Below, one piece after another: positions 11,765-61,262 of a stretch of 64,000 bases of DNA. The notes beneath the pieces were generated by a model, which saw nothing but the letters and a program-made list of their open reading frames with translations, searched no databases and was not told where the DNA came from. This stretch comes from Phyllobates terribilis (Eukaryota), in NCBI RefSeq assembly GCF_046119375.1, contig NW_027362767.1, forward strand, positions 247,194,001-247,258,000, read 5' to 3'. Position numbers and translations under genes: made by a program. The first letter of the stretch is position 1. Each line of letters begins with the position of its first letter.

Positions 11765-14361
11765 ATAGTAAATAGGATATTGTAGATTGTGAGCCCTCGC
11801 GGGCAGGGTCCTCGCTCCTCCTGTACCAGTCGCTGTCACATTGTGTTTAAGATTATTGTAATTGTTCTTGTATTATATCCCTTTTTCACGTGTAAAGCGC
11901 CATGGAATAAATGGCGCTATAATAATAAATAATAATAATAATATGCATAAACATCACGTAATCGCCATATTGGTTGAAAAGACCAATTTTACTGTATTGT
12001 AAAACCTCTTGAGGCAATGACTAAAAATGACAGTAAAAAAGGGCCTAATAGAGAAGTGGTCAATGTACATAGGATATCAGGGAGTTAACATTTTAAGTGA
12101 CAGATTTTCTCATTGATCACGGTTGGTCTTTTACAGACAGGAAAAAATGCAATATATAGGAGGCATTTACATGTATTTTCTTTATTACCTGCACAAAAAA
12201 AGTACAGAACAGAAAAACATGTATATACGTAGTATGTATACAAATGTATTTTTGATATTTTTAATAATTTGGTCATGCTTTTTTAAAGTCATATTTTGTT
12301 TGATTTTTACATTTTTATTGAAAAAAAATATATAAAAAAAACATAAAAAAAAGCAAAATTTAATCAAGAGATGCCTGCCAGCTATGCTGTAAAAAAAGAA
12401 AATCAATATCTCTTCACCGCTGGTAAGTGATGGTTTCTAATGATGCGCCATGTCGGGAATGTACTAGTAATGCAGCTCACCTCATGGTAAAAAAAAATAA
12501 ATAAAAAAATGCTAATTTTACTGCACCTTATAGCACAGAACAAAAGAGAAGCGTGGCCACATTGTCATTTGGCAATGATGAAGCCCGGTGTACGGGAATA
12601 TCCGCCTTACTGCCATATATGATGTGCCGGACGGCGATTTCTGACAGATTTAACGTCTTCCGCATTGTAACACCATATTGCAGGGCAGACAATGCCGCTT
12701 TCTCAGACAGAAGTCAGTACACGGTAAGGCGACAGGCAGACATCGGGGGTCTTCCCGTTGATAATATGGCCGCAGCACCCCCCTCACTTCGAGCGGAGAT
12801 TTTTACACGACTAAAACAGATTTATCAAGATCACCAACGTTTCACACCGGTGACACATTGATAAATGACCTTCAGCTTTGAAAACGCCTCTATAAGCGGT
12901 AATTTAACGGAGAAAAAGGCAATGTTTTTTTTCTTCCTTCCCAACAGGAAAAGGGCATATCGTAAACCACAGAAGAAAAAAAAAATTATGATTCCCCCCC
13001 CCCCATGGGTTATTTTCTGTGAAAATGGAGCTGTAAAAGGTCCTTGTACCTTAAGAACAAATTCTATTACTGCGGGGACGCCTTGAAGGACTGCATGTTT
13101 TAAGGAGTAGACAACACAACTCGTCCAGTGGACTGGCAGAGGTGGACACCATTTTTTTTTTATTATTATATTATTATTTTAAAAATGTATAATATTATAA
13201 AAAAAAGTTTTACTTGAACATCACAAAAATAAAACAATTTATATTTACTACGCATGTAAAAAAAAAAATTGTGTTAATGCTCATGGGATTAGGAATTTTT
13301 CTTTTTAACTCTCAAAAACTATTTTTTTTTTTTCACCTTATTGGGCTTCACAATGCCTCATTAATTATAAGAAACGGATATCTTCTTTACAAGATGGTAG
13401 GATGCCATGTAGCTGCCTCCCATCCCCCTCCATGATGCCAATATGTCACCCCTTACCACAGCACACTGGCGTAGAGTCTGCATTAAAATAAGGAGACCTA
13501 TTGGTTGATCGTTACCGGCGCAGCCGTGTTGCGAAATGCGTCGACCCATAAATGTTCATATTATACCGTATTAACCCTGTGTATGCTGCAGGGCCGGTTT
13601 CTTAAAGAAGCAGATCTGTGAATTCAGGATGTGGCAGTAAAGTGATGCTGTACAATAGCTGCTGCCAGAGAAATGTCATCCGTCGGGGGGAACCTTTCCT
13701 ATCCCAATGAATCGATAGGAGATTCAAGAGCTCTTTTTTTATTACACTGTTACAGCAAACACTGCAGCAGTGTGGAGGCAGGACGATGGGGGGGGGGGGG
13801 AGAAGGACAGCGAGACACATGAAGCAATAGGACGGAGGTGGAGTTTTTCGCTGTCAGAGCATAAATTCCCTTTCCGGAAAACCCAGTAAGGTACTTAAAT
13901 GGCAGGGGTGAGCAATGGCGCGTTTGATGGCTACCAAGTGAAAAAAAAGACGCCGCAATCATCACCCACGACTTACGGGATTATTTTTCCGCGCCTTTAA
14001 TAAATCAAGATATTATGGCACATTTCACTCATGATCTTATCTGCAATACAATGCTGCTGCGAACTGAAACGCGTCGTGCGGTGCTAGGCTTTCAGAAAGC
14101 ATAAGGAAAGTCATTTTTCATCCCTTCTGTATGCCGATTGCTGCCGACTAGCGGCTTAATTCAGTCTGGTATTTGAAGAATAGAAAAAGGTCGGGTTATA
14201 GAATAGCAAGGGTACCCATTTTGCGGTCTTTACAATTGATGCAGTTCATAAAGCGGCCGAGTTCAGGTCATGACTCTTCGGATTGTCTCATTTTAAGACG
14301 AGAATGTAGATTGGAAAGTGAACCTGACGCAATTTAAAGGGGTAACTCCTGGCCCAATATA

Positions 14362-33559: not shown

Positions 33560-36500
33560 CTACAGCTTCAGCTTTCCTGATTGGATCTTTTGATAGGTTT
33601 CATCGTCCAAGCGGATGTACTTTCCTTGCTGGGAATCCAGGACGTACAAGGCGTCTTTCACCACGCTGGGATTAAAGCCTTCTTTCCTCATGTCTGTTTT
33701 TTGGAATTTATATGTTCCTGTGCAGACAGTAAATGGGATAATAAGTGTTAGTTGCATTTTTTTTTTCTTAAATTTCTTCCTCCAATCAGTGGAAGAGACT
33801 GAACCCAGATGAAATCATTAGGCACGTCGCAGTCCAGGAAGGGGGGGGGGTGAGAATGTGGATGGGGAACCATATGATCTACTGTGCGCCAACAGCGACA
33901 TCTGCTGGCTAACAGGGGGAACTACAAAATCTAATCCACTGGTGAAAAAATATAATATGGTTCCACCTGGCGAGATAGTAAGTAGTCTTCTGGTGCCACA
34001 TCTGCTTTAGAAAGCCACACAGTCATTTTATTATTCTGAACTCGTCCACAAAACTGGTCAGACTGGTGACCGGGTGTGTATGGAAGCACATTACTCTCTT
34101 TCCACTATTCAGAACACGTGCAGACATGGCCGAGCAAGCATGTGTAATGGGGACTGATAGAGATGCTGACTTGTTCGACCAACTGCTATGATGTGCATCA
34201 GCCACCTTAAAGGGGTTGTCTGAACAATATTTCCTATATATGTAGCATACAATTAAAAACAAGAAAACTGTACATTTATCTCCTAAACTATCACCACTTC
34301 TCCGATCTCAGTACTGTGTACCCCGCTGGTCTTCTGACAGCTGCGGCCAGTGATTGACAGCAGCCTTCACTTATTCCATAGGAACAGAAAACGCACTGAT
34401 GGAATAAGGCCACCGAGACAGGCAGGGAACTCAGATTTTCCCTAAGTGTATTTACCCCATGACTTCTCAGCAGAAATTAGGATCCAACTGGCCCACCACA
34501 TATCTATAGGACCCCTAATCTGGGTCAGAGATAAGTTTGGACCCAATCACTTTCTGCTGGGATCTATTTTGTCTGAGCGTTTCACAATGAACTTATTAAG
34601 CCTCATGGATGATCAGGCCTGTGTGAAGATGGGCCCCAAGAATAATCTTCTCTGATGGAGCCCACCGTGCGCAGCCACTAGTGCTACACGTACAGTCTTT
34701 ACCCTCTACATCTGTAGGGGGCACTCACCTGTTTTGTTGACCTTCGGCAGCAATCGGAGGAAGACTGGATGTGCGTACCCAGGCAGCGACTTCTTAAGGT
34801 CTTTAACAAATTTTACAAGATCGCTTTTCTGATCGGGGTCAGCGACGGCCGCCATGCCAGCTCTCCCTTCCGTTCCTAAGAAACAAATAAAAGACACAGT
34901 TTTAATACATTCCTGAGCACAAAGCCCTGAGATTCATGAAAAGAGATCGGCCATGTACCTGACACCTCCACTCCGTAGACCACCACGTCTGCTTGTTGGA
35001 GGAGTCTGCTCAGGATTCCTTCCACTTCTGTGGTGGACACATTTTCTCCTTTCCATCGGAAAGTGTCGCCCGTACGATCCCGGAAATACATATAGCCCAG
35101 CTCGTCCATAACCAGTACATCGCCTGGGAGAGGACAAATCAACAGTCGGGAGAGGACAAATCAACAGTCCGGGAGACGACAAATCAACAGTCCGGGAGAC
35201 GACAAATCAACAGTCCGGGAGACGACAAATCAACAGTCCGGGAGACGACAAATCAACAGTCCGGGAGACGACAAATCAACAGTCCGGGAGACGACAAATC
35301 AACAGTCCGGGAGACGACAAATCAACAGTCCGGGAGACGACAAATCAACAGTCCGGGAGACGACAAATCAACAGTCCGGGAGACGACAAATCAACAGTCC
35401 GGGAGACGACAAATCAACAGTCCGGGAGACGACAAATCAACAGTCCGGGAGACGACAAATCAACAGTCCGGGAGACGACAAATCAACAGTCCGGGAGACG
35501 ACAAATCAACAGTCCGGGAGACGACAAATCAACAGTCCGGGAGACGACAAATCAACAGTCCGGGAGACGACAAATCAACAGTCCGGGAGACGACAAATCA
35601 ACAGTCAGTACAAGGAACACTTCTCCATATTTTGGGTACCACTCTTACCGGAGAGATATGCCGTGTCTCCAGGTTTGAAGACATTATTGGCGATTTTCTT
35701 GTTAGTGGCGGACTGGTTTACGTAACCATCAAACCTTCTCAGCGGGTCGGACTGGATGATGCGGCCAACCAGCTGCCCAGGCTCTCCTGTGATAGAAGGC
35801 GGCACACGAATAAATGTCAGCTCCTCCATACTCACGATCGCCACCGATCAGAAACCAATGTGCAGCTACTTTATGAGATTGGAGTACCCCATACATGTGT
35901 CAGTGTACCTGGTACTGCAGTAAGGTCCCATCCACTGGAATAGGACTAACCTGCAGGACCAGAGGTGGCCATTATATGGACAAGTCGCGGTGAGTGTGTG
36001 GACGTGGCCATTGCTGGGTCCTTCAGAAGTTAAGACAGTTTTGGGGCTCACTCAAATTTAATCATATAGCACTTGGCCCAATATTATACTATGGATGCAG
36101 ATCTGTGATTTTTTTCTCATGCCGATTCAGCATGAGAAAACGAGTAATAATCGGGCAATAATCGGATAACGTGCATCCATACAAGTCTATGGGCGCGTGT
36201 GAAACATCAGACTGCTCTCGGATGCCATCCGAGTGCAGTCTGATTACCACGGACACAGAGAATGGAGAAATTACTTTCTTCATCTTCTTCACACCTGTGC
36301 TCCGACTCCATTTGCCTCATTATAGTGAGTGGTTCCATCGGGAATTTTGCCTTAATCGCGGTCTTGGGGATTTACATGGAAACCTTGGTGCAAGTGCTCA
36401 GCGGAGAGCGCAAGATAAATGTGAGCCGAGAATTATTCCAATTTTTTTGAGGGTGGAATGAACTTATAGACAGCAGTACAAGACTAGTTCTTGGTTTATT

Positions 36501-39500: not shown

Positions 39501-42500
39501 GGGTGGACCTGTTTCTGGAAAGAAGCATAAAAATATAAAGACCCATATAGGGGAAAGCAGTAATATGCAAGTATTTTCCTTTTCACGAGACTCCATATGA
39601 AGGTGGCAAGTAGTTCTCCTGTGCAGGAATGGAAGCCGACACTGGCACCAATCAGGAGGGTCTTTAACTCCTTATTTACCTGTAAAGCTCCTTCCAGGGT
39701 CCTTTGGAGGAAGACGAGACGCGCTCTGCAGCAAGGAAGATACGAATTCCGAGCTAGGGGGAACCGCGGTGCGATCGCAGTCACCAAAGCAGAAAAGTCG
39801 TATGGATTTCCCCATCATGGAGTAGACGTCCGTGATTGCTAGAGATACAAGACAAAAAAATTACCCATGGCTGATTTTGGAAAAGCTGGGCAATATTTAA
39901 TAAGGAGCACATATGACCCCAGAAAGCACGTGGCTACCAGCCAATAGTCTGACATGCCTTTCAGGACTCTGGAGAACTTGCCACCCAGCTTTCCAGATTT
40001 CCAGACCGCAGATCTAACGGCACAGATGACAATCTAGATCAAAGTCCGTCCCCAGGTGCAGCCTCTCACCTTGTGACATCTCCTGTCCAAAGATCACAGC
40101 CTTGGAGTTGGAGACGCTGAAGCAATGTTCCAGGGCGTCTAGACGCAAGTTGAAATTTATCAAAGCGGCTTCGACCCCGATTTTAGCCATGCCGAGCCAA
40201 AAGCCGACGTACTCGTTACAGTTCTCCATGAACAGCGCTATGACATCTCCGGTCCGGAAACCTTCAGCGTACAGGAAGTTGGCCACCGCATTGGAAAACT
40301 CGTCCAGCTCCCGGAATGTCCACGTGGCTCCGGTGCCCTCAAATATCAGCGCCGTCTTGTTGGGATGACGTTTAACACATTCCTTAAATATGATGGGGAC
40401 GGTATTCTTCTCCCGCAGGTGTCTTTTCACTTGCAGCTTCACCCGGACGAGGGTTATCGCGCCTCTGCAAAAGAAAAAGAAAAAAGTAAAATCCGTCCGT
40501 AAAATACGTCAGATGCAAAAGTTTCATGGCACAAGTACAACAGGTCCATAGATCCCTATGCGCTTGATGGATACCAGGAGCGTCCCTTTTGGGATGTATA
40601 TATAGCCTCTAGCGCTTTTCTATGCAGATTGCAACCACAAAAAATTAAAAGGCATAGCTATGCAGAATTAGAAGGGTTTTGCCAAAAATATCAGGTTATC
40701 CTCTATTCATGTTGTAGCTTGCTAATCACTGGGAGTCCGACCACTGGGACCTCCAAAGATCCAAACTATGGTGATCTGCAGAGCCATATTCTGAGGGAGC
40801 CATATTCTCAGGATTGATGGGTATAGGGGATAACCTTATTTTTTATTTTTGTAATGGTGGCTTATGCATGACATGGCACTGTGCTGCATACAAAATATGT
40901 CAGGACTTCAGATTCAGTTTTTAGGTGTCCACAAACATAAGGAGAAAGTCGGCTGAAATTGATGACTTTGGTGAGATCGGCCAACCAACCGTCACGTTGG
41001 TGCCTCTGAAGAATGCTAAGGAAAAGAAGGATTGGGCATGCTGGATTCCATCATGCCTGATCCTTTGTGCTCAGTGGAGAGGAGCAGGAGGCAGATGTCC
41101 TTCTCCCTCTTCCCACTGAGAACACACAGCTGAGTGGGCAAGTGTCTTGTGGGGTCACTTACCTCCACACACTTTACCAGGACTAAACCAAAATGCATGG
41201 TTGCTCCAATGCACTCATTATATCCCTTGACTGACCTTAACCATAAGGGGTTGTCCACCATTGGGGACAATTTTTAGTTTTTCTTACATAAATGCATGCA
41301 TTTTTGGGCATTTGAGATTCATTACCAATATTGCACCGTTTGCCTCCTTTTTTACTGGCAGGAGAATGAGTTCAATGAAAATGCATCAGTGAGCTTGTTC
41401 AGACTGTCCAGTGGGACAGTTTGTAACCCTTATCTGTCTTTTTCTGGGCTCATCTCAGCTGATTTAGGACCACAAAGTTAAATGTGAGAGAACCAAACAG
41501 TGCAATATTTGTAATGAAACCCAATTGTAAAAGTGATTTTTGGCCCAAAGTACAGGTCGGAAGATAAAAAGAAAAAAAATTGTCCCTAGAGGTGGACAAG
41601 TCCTTTAAATAGAAGCACTTTCCAACGCAGCTTTCCATCAGAAGTAAAACAAGGGCATGCTAGGAGTTGTAGTTTTGCAACCGCTGGGACTAGACATATT
41701 GAACGGCTCCATTATTGTCCCCAGCAAATCTACAATTGTAATCTGTTGCTTCCTAGCAATATCCATTAGTAGAGATGAGGACTACAACTCCCAATGGAAT
41801 TTTCATCCAGTTTCCACTTTAATTATGTAGAAAGAGAAGGGAATGACAATGAGAGAAAGATCTAGAAAGCTACATAATCCTCTGCTAAAATACTCTGTGC
41901 TGCAGGAATACCCTTCCTGCAGCACAGGAACACCCATTCTACTGCCTCCCGTAACTCTTCTAAAATGCTCTGTGCTGCTGTGGACATGCAAATGGTGACA
42001 ACAGACTGTGGACGTCCACTAGTCTCCGTCCGTTACCCACCAAACAACCCTGTCACATTGACTTGGCACAACGCGTGCCCTGAATGTCGCCATATTTTGC
42101 ATTACAGGAAAGTGCTAATGTGCATTTCATAGGGAACAGTCTTGTCTCTGTGACGCCGTGTATTGCGAGGGGTCACAGGTCACTGCCTTGGACAAAATCA
42201 AACACATTCATCTCCTGCTGCAGCCATCCTTTCCATCAGAGGACTACAAGGCCCCAATATGAGGATGGAGAGGGCTCCAGATAGAAGGGGCAGATATGGC
42301 AAGCCGTTGTAAAGCCTACAGTTGATATCAATGTAATAAATGGACAGGGAAAGGTTACCTTGCAAAATGACAACTATAAAAGCAAAGCACAGTCCATTAG
42401 GAATTGGATAAGAGTGTCCCCGGCGGGGGGCAGAGTCCAGGGCTTATCTTGCAACACACAAATCTAAGCTGGACAATCAAGTTCAAGGATGAAGAACACA

Positions 42501-47500: not shown

Positions 47501-48727
47501 CAGCGATGGGAGTCACCGTGGTTGAACTGGGAAAGGCGAAAGCAAGCCGATTAACTCCCGACGTGCTAAGAAACAAACTAACCCGAATATATCGTAGTAT
47601 CTGCGGTCATACTACTACAACTCTCAATATTGTCTGCAAGCTGGGAACTGCCACTTTATACTTACAGCAGTGGTCTCCAACATGTAGCTCAAAACTACAA
47701 CTCCCAGCATGCCCTGGCATACAGGCTGGGAGTTGTAGTTTTGCAAAAGCTTGAAAATTGCTGCTCTGGAGGAGTCTTAAAGGAGACGTCTGATTTAGAC
47801 AACTTCTTTCCATATAGAGGGGAACAGGAAGACCACTGAAGAGCATACTGATATACCCATGTATTCTGATTTTAATGGGCACTGTGAAACGCTGCAGAAC
47901 CAATCAGGGTGGTACTACAGGTGATAGTGGGGTCATTGTAGGGGGATGTGTTATGTGGTAAGTGAATGTCCAATATGTATGATCCCTTTAAATCTCATGT
48001 ATATATTCAAACATATGACTTGCTGTATATGGATCTAATGGCCCGCTTCTAAACATGAACAGTAGTTCAATGGTCAGAGAGAGGAGATCTCTGACCTGAA
48101 GAACTACCAGAGTCTCATACAGTGGCTTAAAGACCGTGGGCTTATATTCACCCCCATGGGCCACAAACTGCAGCAACAAATGCAGCAATTTTTGGTAGAA
48201 ATGTGTGCGGTTGTCTGCAAGACCAAAAATTCTCCCATTCAGGGCCACCATGCCGGACTAATCTCTGCCTGTGGACGGCTCGACAGACGTACAGCCAGGA
48301 TCTGATTCTTGCTGTTCCTGGATTCATGCTGCCTGAACCACTGACAGGTTCCCTTGAGGCCTCATTCAGATAGCAGTATTTTCCACATATGAAAAAACCT
48401 GACCTATTATTCTGATGAGACTTTGATCAGAGTGTGGTCCAAGTGGTAATAGCTTATCTTGTGCGTGGAGAATTTAAAAAAGAAAAAAAAAGTTTCTCCA
48501 CCTTCTTCCTGATTGTCCGTGAAATAAATCGGACGGCACTCAGATGTCATCTGAGTGAGGTCCGATTTTTTTATGGACCCATTGACTTGCAATGCCGATT
48601 TTGATCCGACCCTTGGATCAAAATCAGACTTGTCTCTGATATTCCGATATAGTCTGAGAAACACTAGGTCCGAGGAAAAGAAAAATAATCAGACATGTGC
48701 ACCAAACCAGGCAAATCAACAGGCTCG

Positions 48728-49300
48728 GTTTTTGAAGTGAATACAACCAAGCAACGACAGCAATCATCAAATATATAATTTCTTTATTGATGAAACAATA
48801 ACATAACTATTCAGATTAAAAAGAGCCTCAAACTGTGAGGGCCACTAGAATAGACCTATTTATACTTGCATTTTTATACTCAAAAAAACTCAATAGAGAT
48901 TGAATGCAACTGCAGGTTATACCACCTAGCTGCAGATATATGTATATTCCAGGTATGCCATACTATAGAGCCAATCAATTAACTAGCAGCCGTGTATAAT
49001 AAAACACAGGTGAAAAAGCTGCTATTTCTTATATAAAGTGCATAGTGCTCTGGCATGTGCCTAAATGAAATATAGCAGATATATAAGATGTAGATAGTAT
49101 TTCATTACCTTAAAAAAAAAGCTGCCAGATTACTGATACAAACAAGGACCTGTGTCCCTCCACCCCCCCTGAGGAAATGCATACGAAACGTGCGTTGGGG
49201 TGGAGGAACACAGGACCTTGTTTTTATATTTGTCTCATCAATAAAGAAGTTATATATTTTATGATTGCTGTGGTTGCTTGGTTGTATTCACTTCAAAAAC
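48728..49300. mobile_element. Penelope-like retroelement relic with inverted termini
   Basis: About 70-bp inverted repeat (48728-48798 vs 49230-49300), with the hammerhead motif and AATAAA (49240-49245) at the right end. No RT or GIY-YIG sequence recognised. Confidence 0.5.
49142..49221 (+). ncRNA. Minimal type I hammerhead ribozyme motif (Penelope-like)
   Basis: CTGAGGA 49169-49175, short stem II region, GAAAC 49185-49189, loop GTGC, GTT 49194-49196. These are enclosed by a long stem I (ACAAGGACCTGTGTCCCTCCACCCC pairing with GGGGTGGAGGAACACAGGACCTTGT). Stem II is imperfect. Confidence 0.65.
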
Positions 49301-49900
49301 AGTCTGTTGATTTGAACGTGTCTATATATACACAGCTATACTGAGTGCTTTTTGAGGACATTCTTTGAGGATTATCATGTGCACAGACCCATAGAATATC
49401 AAAAGGTATGAGCACTGTGAAAACCACAGATTGCACTTGTATGAAAGAGATCTTAAGGGAATTTTCCAGAATTTACCTCCCCAAAAGATGGCAAATATAA
49501 TTTGCTTTGGTCCCAATCGCTGCTGCTATACCTCCAGGCGTGAAGACATGTCTGAGGGCCACGGTGGACAAGTGACCATAGAATGTCCTTTTAGGTTATT
49601 GAACCCCAATTGGGTCATTAAAAAATATTTTGGGGTGCACCTTATTCATATATATGTAGCGGATACCTCGTAATAACAGTATATACCTGGAGGAGATAGA
49701 TATTATAGATATATGTGTATATATATATTACACATTGTGTGCGTAATATATCTCGAGCACAGACAATAAAAACAAACCTGACCCACGAAGGGTCACATGT
49801 CAGAGGTCACCATACAGGCCGATCCCAGGGAGTCAGCAGACTCCGGTGATGGCTGGTCACTCGCATGCCCCCGTCCCCTCCTGGGGGTCCCCATCATATA

Positions 49901-50994
49901 CAGGTGCATCTCACTAGATTAGATCAAAAAGTGAATTTATTTCAGTTCTTCAATACAAAAAGTGAAACTTGTTATATAGAGTCATTACAAACAGAGTGAT
50001 CTATTTTAAGTGTTTATTTCTGTTAATGTTGATGATTAAGTCATTATCTCAGTAAATTAGAATACTTTATATCAACCGCTTGAAAAATGTTTTTAAAATC
50101 TGAAATGTTGTCCTACTGAAATGTCTGTTCAGTAAATGCCCTCAATACTTGGTCGGGCTCCTTTTGCATCAATTACTGCATCAATGCGGCAATGTGGCAT
50201 GGAGGCGATCAGCCTGTGGCACTGCTGAGGTGTTATGGAAGCCCAGGTGGCTTTCATAGCAGCCTTCAGCTCGTCTGCATTGTTGGGTCTGGGGTCTCAT
50301 CTTCCTCTTGACAATACCCCATAGATTCTCTATAATAGATTCTCTATGGGGTTAAGGTCAGGCGAGTTTGCTGCCAATCAAGCACAGTGATGCTGTTGTG
50401 TGTAAACTTTTGGCAGTGTGAACAGGGGCCAATTCCTGCTGAAGAATGACATTTCCATCTCCATAACATTTGTCGGCAGAGGGAAGCATGAAGTGCTGTA
50501 AAATGTCCTGGTAGACGGCTGCGCTGACTTTGGTCTTGATAAAACACAGTGGACCTCCACCAGCAGATGACATGGCTCCCCAAACCATCACTAATTGTGG
50601 AAACTTCACACTAGACCTCAAGCAGCTTGGATTGTGACCTCTCCACTCTTCCTCCAGACTCTGGGACCTTGTGGAGTGTGTCAATGACTGCCTTCTGGAC
50701 ATCTGTCAAGTCAGCAGTCTTCCCCATGATTGTGGAGCCTACTGAAACAGACTAAGGGACCTTTTTAAATGCTTAGGAAGCCTTTTCAGGTGTTTTTTGA
50801 TAATTATTCTGATTTACTGAGACTTTTGTGTTTTCATTGGCTGTAAGCCATAATCATTAACATTAACAGAAATAAACACTTGAAATAGATCACTCTTTAT
50901 GTAATGACTATATAATATGAGTTTCACTTTTTGTATTGAAGAACTGAAATAAATGAACTTTTTGATGATATTCTAATTTAGTGAGATGAACCTG
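49901..50994 (-). mobile_element. Internally deleted Tc1-family DNA transposon in SLC27A4 intron 1
   Basis: Termini CAGGTGCATCTCACTAGATTAGA and TCTAATTTAGTGAGATGAACCTG with long TIRs and TA on both flanks. Minus-strand transposase remnant VMVWGAMSSAGGGPLCFIKTKVSAAVYQDILQHFMLPSAD...QQELAPVHTAKS (50358-50702). Confidence 0.92.
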
Positions 50995-59640: not shown

Positions 59641-59894
59641 CTGAGAAGTGCTGGAGAATCTAGTTGTCACATGACCGCAGATAAGCAAATCACATACTTG
59701 AGATCATGTGACCGCCCTCTAATGCTGAGAATAGCATTACACACTTGAGATTTGGCAATTTTTCTAGGTCCCTGGAAAACCCCTATGGTAAGTAGTGAGT
59801 ACCCCCTAGTGGCAGCTACAGGTACAACATTATCATAGATTTCTATCACATATAAACCAATCACCCAAAGAAATGGGTCAGAGCAACTCCTAAA

Positions 59895-61262
59895 TGGGGT
59901 CTTGTGTGGTGTGCCCGGTATATGGCGGGTCTTGTGGGGTGTCTCCGGTATATGGCGGGTCTTGTGGGGTGTCTCCGGTATATGGTGGGTCTTGTGGGAT
60001 GTCTCCGGTATATGGCGGGTCTTGTGGGGTGTCTCCGGTATATAGCGGGTCTTGTGGCATGTTCCTGGTATATCCCGGTATATGGCATGTCTTGTGGGGT
60101 GTTCCCGGTATACGGCAGGTATTGTGGAGTGTTCCCGGTATACAGCAGGTATTGTGGAGTATTCCTGGTATATGGCAGGTCTTGTGGGGTGTTCCCGGCA
60201 TATGGGGGTCTTGTGGTGTGTTTTCCCGGTATACGGCGGGTCTTGTGGGGTGTTACCGGTATACGTCGGGTCTTGTGAGGTTTCTCGGTATACAGAGGGT
60301 CTTGCTGGGTGCTCCCGGTATACGGCGGGTCCTGTGGGTTATTCCCTGTACACGCCAGGTCTTGTGGGGTGTTCCCGGTATACGGCGAGTCTTATGGGGT
60401 GTTCCCGGTATACGGCGGGTCTTGTGGGGTGTTCCCAGTGTACGGCGGGTCTTGTGGGGTGTTCCCGGTATACAGCGGGTTTTGTGGAGTGTTCCCAGTA
60501 TATGGCGGGTCTTGTGGGGTGTTCGCGGTATATGGGGGTCTTGTGGGGTGTTCCCGGTATACGGCGGGTCTTGTGGGGTGTTCTCGGTATACGCCGGGTC
60601 TTTTGGGGTGTTCCCGGTATACGCTGGGTCATGTGGGGTGTTCGCGGTATACACCGGGTCTTGTGGGGTGTTCCCAGTATACGCCGGGTCTTGTGGGGTG
60701 TTCTTGGTATACAGCGGGTCTTGTGGGGTGTTCTTGGTATACAGCGGGTCTTGTGGGGTGTTCCCAGTATACGCCAGGTCTTGTGGGGTGTTCCCGGTAT
60801 ACGGCGGGTCTTGTGGGGTGTCCCCGGTATATGGCGGGTCTTGTGGGGTGTTCCCGGTATACGCCAGGTCTTGTGGGGTGTTCCCGGTATACGCCAGGTC
60901 TTGTGGGGTGTTCCCGGTATACGGCGGGTCTTGTGGGGTGTTCCCGGTATACGGCAGGTCTTGTGGGGTGTTCCCGGTATACGCCGGGTCTTGTGGGGTG
61001 TTCTTGGTATACAGCGGGTCTTGTGGGGTGTTCCCAGTATACGCCAGGTCTTGTGGGGTGTTCCCGGTATACGGCGGGTCTTGTGGGGTGTTCCCGGTAT
61101 ACGGCGGGTCTTGTGGGGTGTTCCCGGTATACGCCGGGTCTTGTGGGGTGTTCCTGGTATACGCCGGGTGTTATAGGGTGTTCACTGTATACAGCGGGTC
61201 TTGTGGGGTGTTCCCGGTATACAGCGGGTCTTGTGGGGTGTTCCTAGTATAACATAGGTCTT
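59895..61262. repeat. 30-bp minisatellite, about 45 copies
   Basis: Unit GGTATACGGCGGGTCTTGTGGGGTGTTCCC. This explains the 452/374/312-aa repetitive ORFs. Confidence 0.97.

What the first reader, a model, noticed from the sequence alone, without database searches (positions are those of the whole stretch)
49142..49221. Near-intact minimal hammerhead ribozyme in a Penelope-like inverted repeat inside SLC27A4 intron 1
Seen: catalytic core CUGAGGA, AAUGCAUAC (containing palindrome AUGCAU), GAAAC, GUGC, GUU, closed by a stem I of about 24 bp with a 2-C bulge and two mismatches. AATAAA follows about 45 nt after the cleavage triplet, and the whole sits in a ~70-bp inverted-repeat element. Known: Penelope-like elements and amphibian satellites carry minimal type I hammerheads with very short stem III that often cleave as dimers. 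Inference: this is a self-cleaving RNA module of a PLE or retrozyme-like family. It is antisense to SLC27A4, so it would act only on an antisense transcript. The stem II closing pair is A-C rather than G-C, so it may be crippled.
Basis: partly seen in the sequence, partly recalled or inferred. Interest (0 to 1): 0.75.

Follow-up and report, generated by a model that had tools for sequence, protein, structure and literature searches.

The report
Hammerhead relic lacking helix II
A frog intron holds a 673-base jumping-gene insertion whose central hairpin is capped by the conserved boxes of a hammerhead self-cutting RNA, but one of the three helices that ribozyme needs is missing, so it is most likely a dead relic of the Penelope-type ribozymes already known to be abundant in frogs.

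Summary
On the + strand CUGAGGA (49169-49175), GAAAC (49185-49189) and GUU (49194-49196) sit in the 30-nt loop of a hairpin with 31-nt arms. "Near-intact" is wrong. The 9 nt between the two core boxes cannot form helix II. Rfam Hammerhead_1 aligns end to end but scores 19.3 bits against a threshold of 34. The predicted fold buries GAAA and the cleavage U in a competing 7-bp helix. There is no second copy to dimerise with.

Empty-site contigs and an exact 9-bp target duplication (CATGTGCAC) define a discrete 673-bp insertion, 48703-49375. Its left arm plus the hairpin's 5' arm make one 118-nt inverted copy of the sequence that begins exactly at the predicted cleavage site. This layout, together with a 61-nt one-sided extension, matches published Penelope-like insertions. 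No Penelope-like reverse-transcriptase or endonuclease ORF is present, and no related copies could be fetched.

Verdict: probably a decayed Penelope-type minimal hammerhead, on the strand antisense to a fatty-acid-transport-type gene and with no evidence of transcription. Interest is low. Unchecked first-reader notes of this scan report similar hammerhead-capped hairpins elsewhere in this genome, but not on this DNA.

The parts
48694..48702 (.). Left target-site duplication, CATGTGCAC
   Evidence: Exact 9-nt direct repeat of 49376-49384. Contigs of other copies of the surrounding high-copy repeat join about 48644 to 49380 and 48606 to 49415 without the insert (table 5 and 5c).
48703..49375 (+). 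Whole 673-bp insertion into an older high-copy repeat
   Evidence: Bounded by the 9-bp duplication and by the empty-site joints. A contig from a DNA run of the same species covers 48600-49952 with no differing letters (record 4).
48712..48798 (-). Outer left arm: inverted copy of 49230-49314
   Evidence: 87 nt at 92% identity to the reverse complement of the right arm.
48799..49135 (.). 337-bp AT-rich non-coding segment that separates the two parts of the inverted copy. It is either a later insertion or the upstream body of the + strand copy.
   Evidence: When it is removed, the left arm joins the hairpin's 5' arm with only a 2-nt gap against the right side. It holds no ORF over 38 aa and no tRNA. 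Paralogous contigs cover 48960-49130 and 49020-49166 (records 5 and 6).
49136..49166 (+). Hairpin 5' arm (helix I 5' strand plus closing stem). It is the inverted copy of 49197-49227.
   Evidence: 28 of 31 positions complementary. The hairpin folds at -50.7 kcal/mol, z -8.45, and equally well on the - strand at -52.4 kcal/mol.
49169..49175 (+). Core box CUGAGGA (C3 to A9)
   Evidence: Aligned to the Hammerhead_1 consensus.
49176..49184 (+). 9-nt linker AAUGCAUAC in the place of helix II and loop 2
   Evidence: No fold possible. The closing pair is flagged non-canonical, with 7 nt inside against 12 in the model. In the predicted fold, 49176-49182 pair with 49190-49196.
49185..49196 (+). GAAA box, 2-bp helix III (A49188-U49195, C49189-G49194) with loop GUGC, and U17. 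The predicted cut falls after 49196.
49197..49227 (+). Hairpin 3' arm, starting at the nucleotide after the predicted cleavage site
49230..49314 (+). Outer right arm, continuous with the 3' arm. It contains AATAAA at 49240-49245.
49315..49375 (+). 61-nt extension present at the right end only (tail-like)
   Evidence: It lies between the end of the inverted repeat and the right target duplication. Compare the one-sided 30-40-bp tail of Penelope-like elements in PMC8557442 and PMC11167929.
49376..49384 (.). Right target-site duplication, CATGTGCAC

Best explanation
This is a dead relic of a Penelope-type minimal type I hammerhead. It sits at the tip of an inverted duplication inside a 673-bp retroelement-style insertion (48703-49375, 9-bp target duplication).

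Shown:
- Both catalytic boxes, the A15.1-U16.1 pair, the C-G 15.2-16.2 pair and a cleavable GUU triplet are present, with a short helix I extended by a long closing stem.
- Helix II is missing, and the RNA is predicted to fold into a plain long hairpin that hides GAAA and the cleavage site.
- The motif is a single copy with no partner for the dimer that such ribozymes need.
- It lies antisense in an intron.

Inferred:
- The source element carried a working or protein-assisted hammerhead, and this copy or its lineage lost helix II.
- The long "stem I" is not an RNA adaptation. It is a DNA-level inverted copy of the 118 nt downstream of the cleavage site.
- That inverted copy arose during insertion. 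Either the first-strand cDNA snapped back on the helix I complementarity and primed its own copy, or the usual Penelope-like inverted 5'-truncated partner formed.

Expected activity of this locus today: none.
For: - Sequence and core boxes.
- Rfam Hammerhead_1 is the top family for the stretch, with a full-length alignment (model 1-45), 19.3 bits, E 0.0071 in a 56-nt search.
- Helix I of 4 G-C pairs, then a bulge and a closing stem, and a palindromic 15.2-16.2 pair with loop 3, are traits listed for Penelope-like min-hammerheads in PMC4209133. That paper counts about 9,000 such motifs in Xenopus tropicalis.
- Discrete insertion: exact 9-bp duplication and empty-site joints in other copies of the host repeat.
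- The left arm plus the 5' arm form one inverted copy that starts at the predicted cleavage site.
- Inverted 5'-truncated partner copies and a one-sided tail are described for Penelope-like elements (PMC8557442, PMC11167929).
- Summed contig depth rises from 9 to 91 towards the right end against a baseline of about 5. Two related species hold 49104-49385. This suggests a low-copy, 5'-truncated family.
- Inactivity: the linker cannot pair. The hammerhead-type fold is -40.8 against -49.7 kcal/mol, an ensemble fraction of 2e-7. There is no second copy in 64 kb.
Against: - No related copy could be read, so conservation of the core, covariation, and whether the family ever had helix II are all unknown.
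- No RT or GIY-YIG endonuclease ORF is present. The 55-aa ORF that starts in the linker has no homologue among 1.84 billion representatives.
- The Rfam score is far below gathering, and at that score tens of chance hits per frog genome are expected from the E-value.
- The hairpin is equally stable on both strands, as any DNA palindrome would be.
- One paralogous contig stops aligning exactly at the start of the loop (record 6), which hints that the core may not be shared.
- The 61-nt extension is longer than the published 30-40-bp tail.
- Contig depth is not a copy number, as the tool itself warns.
Confidence: 0.6

Rival explanations
1. The hammerhead resemblance is chance. The locus is a palindromic (foldback or MITE-like) element whose arms run on into the loop. 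AATGCAT faces GTGCGTT around an ACGAAAC tip, and a 9-nt indel (CCCTGAGGA) on one arm happens to spell the first core box.
For: - The predicted fold is exactly that extended hairpin.
- It is as stable on the - strand.
- Rfam gives no hit at the gathering threshold or in the 901-nt search, and only 19.3 bits in the 56-nt search.
- The loose descriptor is expected 0.01 times per 64 kb, which means hundreds per genome.
- A paralogous contig diverges at the loop (record 6).
Against: - Eleven fixed core positions plus the 15.2-16.2 pair, all anchored to both ends of the loop, have a probability of a few in a million per hairpin (my estimate).
- The genome is rich in real Penelope-like hammerheads (PMC4209133; unchecked scan notes).
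- The insertion has a variable-type 9-bp duplication, asymmetric ends and no terminal inverted repeats at its true ends. That does not fit a cut-and-paste element.
Confidence: 0.18
2. It is a working hammerhead variant that does without a normal helix II. It would resemble engineered minizymes or the natural one-base-pair helix II case, and would cleave with protein help or as a trans dimer with other copies.
For: - All strictly conserved core positions are intact.
- Natural hammerheads with a helix II of two base pairs, and even one, are active (PMC3088659).
- The Anolis Poseidon hammerhead cleaves only when its protein is added (PMC11167929).
- The ACGUGCGU stretch can pair with itself through G-U pairs.
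- The hairpin region is the part best kept in two related species.
Against: - The only G-C option for helix II (G49179-C49184) would leave three extra nucleotides after A9.
- The competing fold is 9 kcal/mol better, and the co-fold of two modules keeps it.
- No copy lies nearby for a dimer.
- No contigs cover the insert in the one possible RNA run.
- The motif is antisense in an intron.
Confidence: 0.07
3. The hairpin matters as a structure in the host pre-mRNA (- strand), for example as a small-RNA precursor or an editing substrate, and the hammerhead boxes are irrelevant.
For: - The - strand hairpin folds at -52.4 kcal/mol, z -7.8.
- Generic miRNA-hairpin models give weak matches: mir-4716 at 31 bits against a gathering score of 76.
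Against: - All miRNA matches are far below threshold and merely reflect a long stem.
- There is no expression evidence.
- The element is a young insertion, with arms 90-94% alike, not a conserved gene feature.
Confidence: 0.03

Closest known systems
Minimal type I hammerheads of metazoan Penelope-like elements (Cervera and de la Pena 2014, PMC4209133)
   Same: - CUGANGA, GAAA and UH boxes.
- A 4-bp helix I followed by an internal bulge and a closing stem.
- A very short helix III with a C-G 15.2-16.2 pair and a self-pairing 4-nt loop.
- A frog genome.
- Found mostly as single dispersed motifs in truncated elements.
   Different: - The family has a long helix II (6-8 bp) with a conserved G10.1-C11.1 pair. 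Here there is none.
- The closing stem here is 31 bp and is part of a 118-nt inverted duplication.
- No consensus family could be shown.
Rfam Hammerhead_1 (RF00163)
   Same: Full-length alignment to the model, with helix I, both boxes and helix III in register.
   Different: 19.3 bits against a gathering score of 34. The helix II closing pair is non-canonical, and the hairpin is shortened from 12 to 7 inner nucleotides.
Penelope-like insertion architecture (Craig et al. 2021, PMC8557442; PAc, PMC11167929)
   Same: - A 5'-truncated copy with an inverted 5'-truncated partner at its 5' side.
- An extension at one end only.
- A target duplication.
- A hammerhead roughly 120-180 nt from the 3' end.
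   Different: - No RT/GIY-YIG ORF and no direct pseudo-LTR.
- The extension is 61 nt rather than 30-40 nt.
- The inverted copy is interrupted by 337 bp.
Non-LTR retrozymes of amphibians (bioRxiv 10.64898/2026.07.22.740005)
   Same: A type I hammerhead motif in a short non-coding frog repeat related to pseudo-LTRs. Monomers are common in introns.
   Different: Retrozymes are tandem arrays with a hammerhead in each unit. This is one copy in an inverted, not tandem, arrangement.
Engineered minizymes and the natural one-base-pair helix II hammerhead (PMC3088659)
   Same: Core kept while helix II is reduced.
   Different: Those keep the 10.1-11.1 pair or a tertiary pseudoknot, and their cleavage was tested experimentally. 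Here no such pair or contact is seen and nothing was tested.

Membership tests
Hammerhead ribozyme, type I (RF00163) | Conserved core: C3 U4 G5 A6 N7 G8 A9, G12 A13 A14, A15.1-U16.1, H17 | tested here: met
   49169-49175, 49185-49188, A49188-U49195 and U49196.
Hammerhead ribozyme, type I (RF00163) | Helix II of at least 1-2 bp, closed by the 10.1-11.1 pair | tested here: not met
   The 9-nt linker AAUGCAUAC has no fold. The pair is flagged non-canonical in the model alignment.
Hammerhead ribozyme, type I (RF00163) | Helix I flanking the cleavage site and C3 | tested here: met
   Four G-C pairs, then a CC bulge, then about 25 more pairs.
Hammerhead ribozyme, type I (RF00163) | Covariance-model score at or above Rfam's gathering score (34 bits) | tested here: not met
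   No hit. 19.3 bits.
Hammerhead ribozyme, type I (RF00163) | Self-cleavage at the predicted site | not testable with these tools
   Only contigs were available, so RNA ends cannot be seen.
Penelope-like min-hammerhead (PMC4209133) | Long helix II (6-8 bp) with G10.1-C11.1 and one unpaired nucleotide after A9 | tested here: not met
Penelope-like min-hammerhead (PMC4209133) | Palindromic 15.2-16.2 pair and loop 3, allowing a dimer | tested here: met
   C49189-G49194 with loop GUGC, which pairs with itself through two G-U pairs. No partner copy is present.
Penelope-like min-hammerhead (PMC4209133) | Member of a consensus family with covariation within the genome | not testable with these tools
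   No frog genome collection was available. The metagenome scan gave only bacterial tRNA-terminator hits. Reads gave summed depth only.
Penelope-like element | ORF with telomerase-like RT and GIY-YIG endonuclease | tested here: not met
   The longest ORF in the insert is 55 aa, with no homologue. A 5'-truncated copy would lack the ORF anyway.
Penelope-like element | 5' truncation, inverted or tandem partner copy, one-sided tail | tested here: met
   Inverted copy 48712-48798 plus 49136-49166 against 49197-49314. A 61-nt extension at the right end only.
Non-LTR retrozyme | Head-to-tail tandem units, each with a hammerhead | tested here: not met
   A single copy in 64 kb.

The most novel reading that the evidence does not exclude
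The hairpin is a footprint of how Penelope-like elements make their puzzling inverted copies. The first-strand cDNA ended just past the hammerhead core, folded back on the helix I complementarity, and primed a copy of itself. This left the ribozyme core as the loop and two arms that begin exactly at the cleavage site and end at the same 3' position. If hammerhead-capped hairpins of this kind are common in the frog genome, as two unchecked scan notes suggest, their junctions would make the undefined Penelope-like insertion mechanism testable by genome survey.
Probability: 0.25. Interest if true: 0.5.

Novelty: new member of a known kind. Interest (0 to 1): 0.22.

Why it matters
Taken at face value it matters little. 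Frog genomes hold thousands of Penelope-type hammerhead motifs and many decayed ones. This copy lacks a helix, has no partner, and sits antisense in an intron.

Two points give it some value:
- It shows that a motif can keep every conserved core base, look near-intact to the eye, and still fail the structural test. That is useful for calibrating hammerhead calls in this scan.
- The inverted copy begins exactly at the predicted cleavage site and both arms share one outer end. If this recurs across the genome, it would bear on the still undefined way in which Penelope-like elements create inverted pseudo-LTRs.

Tried and rejected
- **Rfam on larger stretches.** The whole window at gathering threshold found only mir-219 at 4994-5074. 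The 901-nt search at E<=10 found only generic miRNA-hairpin models. The hammerhead model appeared only when 56 nt were searched.
- **Other copies in the window.** There are none by pattern search with 3 mismatches or by word-size-7 blastn.
- **Metagenome scan.** I searched for arm plus core with a free helix II length. All 19 loci were GC-rich bacterial or soil contigs, 17 of them a tRNA 3' end followed by a terminator-like hairpin, unrelated to this element.
- **The 55-aa ORF.** In the Anolis element the ORF starts in helix II (PMC11167929). Here an ATG at 49177 opens a 55-codon frame that ends near the insert's end. It has no homologue among 1.84 billion representatives, and a frame that long has about a 4% chance per frame in this composition. 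I dropped the idea.
- **Trans helix II through the AUGCAU palindrome.** It would leave A-A mismatches and two extra nucleotides before G12, so it does not restore a canonical core (reasoned from the sequence). The co-fold of two modules keeps the competing hairpins.
- **tRNA-derived SINE for the 337-bp segment.** There is no tRNA, and I found no terminal repeats or clear target duplication.
- **Lunse, Weinberg and Breaker paper on dimeric Penelope-like hammerheads.** It is not held in the library.
- **Expression.** The only possible RNA run has no contigs on 48728-49291, although it has low-depth exact contigs just downstream. A hole proves nothing.

Full report
**What is in the sequence.** On the + strand, a 31-nt arm (49136-49166) and its complement (49197-27) enclose 30 nt. 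Read as RNA, these 30 nt are CC, CUGAGGA, AAUGCAUAC, GAAAC, GUGC, GUU. The arms agree at 28 of 31 positions. AATAAA lies at 49240-49245, 44 nt after U49196. An outer inverted repeat pairs 48712-48798 with 49230-49314 at 92-94%.

**Host gene.** An exon matching the start of the Pfam AMP-binding domain lies on the - strand at 40017-40508 (E 2.6e-22). A GC-rich island lies at 51.5-52.4 kb. The motif is therefore in an upstream intron and antisense to the gene. I did not test whether the gene is SLC27A4 or whether this is intron 1. A mir-219 precursor at 4994-5074 fits, from my own knowledge, the human neighbourhood of SLC27A4.

**Is it a hammerhead?**
- The only topology that fits is type I, with the long stem as helix I.
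- All strictly conserved positions are present: C3 to A9, G12 to A14, A15.1-U16.1, C15.2-G16.2 and U17.
- Helix I is four G-C pairs, then a CC bulge, then a long closing stem.
- Helix III is 2 bp with the loop GUGC, which can pair with itself through G-U pairs.
- These helix I and helix III traits are the ones PMC4209133 lists for Penelope-like minimal hammerheads. That paper also lists a long helix II (6-8 bp) with a conserved G10.1-C11.1 pair.
- Here the nine nucleotides between A9 and G12 cannot fold at all. AUGCAU is a palindrome with no loop. The only G-C option would be one pair, with three extra nucleotides after A9.
- Rfam finds nothing at gathering threshold and nothing at E<=10 on 901 nt.
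- On 56 nt, Hammerhead_1 aligns over its full length to 49163-49202 at 19.3 bits against a gathering score of 34. The helix II pair is marked non-canonical.
- That E-value (0.0071 for 112 nt and 4227 models) scales to about 0.002 for this model over the window, but to tens of chance hits per frog genome.

**Predicted folding.**
- The minimum-energy fold is -50.7 kcal/mol with z -8.45.
- In it AAUGCAU (49176-49182) pairs with GUGCGUU (49190-49196). This leaves ACGAAAC as the tip and hides both the GAAA box and the cleavage site.
- Forcing the core open with helix III costs about 9 kcal/mol. That state is 2e-7 of the ensemble.
- Two modules folded together keep the competing hairpins.
- The reverse strand folds as well, at -52.4 kcal/mol. 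The stem is therefore a DNA-level inverted repeat and not a strand-specific RNA feature.

**Chance.** A descriptor with both boxes, the 15.2-16.2 pair, UH and a contiguous stem I of at least 4 bp, but no helix II, occurs 0.01 times per 64 kb in shuffles. That is hundreds of times per genome. The same boxes anchored at both ends of the loop of a long hairpin have, by my estimate, a probability of a few in a million per hairpin. X. tropicalis alone has about 9,000 such motifs (PMC4209133), and unchecked notes of this scan report many in this frog. I therefore put descent from a real hammerhead well ahead of chance. I could not show it by comparison.

**The element around it.**
- Contigs from DNA runs of this species and of two related species were laid on 47600-50400. 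Only contigs were available.
- The flanks 48352-48727 and 49386-49479 belong to one high-copy repeat.
- Other copies of that repeat join about 48644 to 49380, with 40 diverged letters between, and 48606 to 49415. They lack what lies between.
- Together with an exact 9-bp direct repeat CATGTGCAC at 48694-48702 and 49376-49384, this defines a 673-bp insertion, 48703-49375.
- Inside it, the left outer arm and the hairpin's 5' arm align as one piece, with a 2-nt gap, to the reverse complement of 49197-49314.
- The insertion therefore holds a 118-nt inverted copy of the sequence that begins at the nucleotide after the predicted cleavage site. Both copies end at the same outer position. A 337-bp non-coding segment (48799-49135) interrupts the inverted copy.
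- Nine nucleotides on the left and 61 on the right lie outside the repeat.
- There are no terminal inverted repeats at the true ends and no poly(A).
- This matches the Penelope-like layout in PMC8557442: frequent 5' truncation, an inverted 5'-truncated copy at the 5' side, and a one-sided tail. It also matches the Anolis element in PMC11167929, where the hammerhead lies one to two hundred nucleotides from the insertion's 3' end.

**Copy number and relatives.** Summed contig depth in the same-species run rises from 9 to 17, 40, 68 and 91 between 48822 and 49291, against about 5 in single-copy flanks. The two related species cover 49104-49385 but not 48728-49009. This fits a low-copy, 5'-truncated family. 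The tool warns that such depth is not a copy number.

**The 337-bp segment: two readings, both open.**
- Later insertion into a once continuous 266-bp hairpin. The seamless join favours this, as does one paralogous contig that ends at 49130.
- Upstream body of the + strand copy, with the inverted partner truncated at the base of a stable hairpin. The smooth depth gradient favours this, as does one paralogous contig that runs from 49020 to 49166. That contig stops exactly where the loop begins. This may mean that its loop differs.

**Mechanism.** I take the locus to be inert. As to origin, the arrangement is what self-primed second-strand synthesis would give. A cDNA that ended two nucleotides before C3 could fold back, with its terminal Gs pairing to the C run copied from helix I, and then copy itself to its own 5' end. 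This would yield the core as the loop and two arms with a shared outer end. This is inference from one locus. Two unchecked notes in this genome describe hairpins of 247 and 259 letters capped by a hammerhead, one with an arm starting at the cleavage site.

**What failed.**
- I could not obtain any related copy. The window has none.
- The metagenome scan returned only bacterial tRNA-terminator sequences.
- Searches of earlier findings by sequence were blank.
- The 55-aa ORF that starts in the linker has no homologue.
- The possible RNA run has no contigs on the insert.

The N runs at 2935-3080 and 5904-6110 were left alone.

**Verdict.**
- Observation: partly confirmed.
- Interpretation: partly supported.
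- Best explanation: a decayed Penelope-type hammerhead in a Penelope-like inverted insertion (0.6).
- Rivals: chance motif in a palindrome (0.18), working helix-II-less variant (0.07), host-strand hairpin function (0.03).
- This is a new member of a known kind. Interest is low.

Noticed in passing
window 4994-5074 (+): mir-219 microRNA precursor, Rfam RF00251, 73.5 bits against a gathering score of 54.5. It is the only Rfam family above threshold in the window.
   Followed up: no
window 48352-48702 and 49376-49479: High-copy repeat into which the 673-bp element inserted. Summed contig depth is in the thousands to tens of thousands against about 5 for single-copy flanks. It is also present in two related species and in the possible RNA run. 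It has internal palindromes at 48522-48572 and 48590-48632.
   Followed up: partly
window 49856-50400: Extremely abundant repeat. Summed contig depth is 0.5-2.4 million in the same-species run and comparably high in the two related species. Many internal joints suggest tandem or rearranged units.
   Followed up: no
window 59670-61249, 10056-11835 and 34963-35940: Long open frames on both strands made of short tandem units, for example repeated PVYGGSCGV-like and VRCACVLPQALVYF-like motifs. These look like minisatellite arrays and not genes.
   Followed up: no
L001-L008, L011-L019 (metagenome contigs): Seventeen GC-rich bacterial contigs share a tRNA 3' end followed by a hairpin (CTGATGACCAGCGG-AAAC-GCTGGTCATC type). 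This hairpin matches the CUGAUGA...GAAAC pattern by accident. It is a trap for pattern-based hammerhead searches.
   Followed up: partly
window 40017-40508 (-): Exon encoding the start of an AMP-binding domain of the fatty-acid transport protein or acyl-CoA synthetase type. It is preceded by a polypyrimidine tract and AG.
   Followed up: partly
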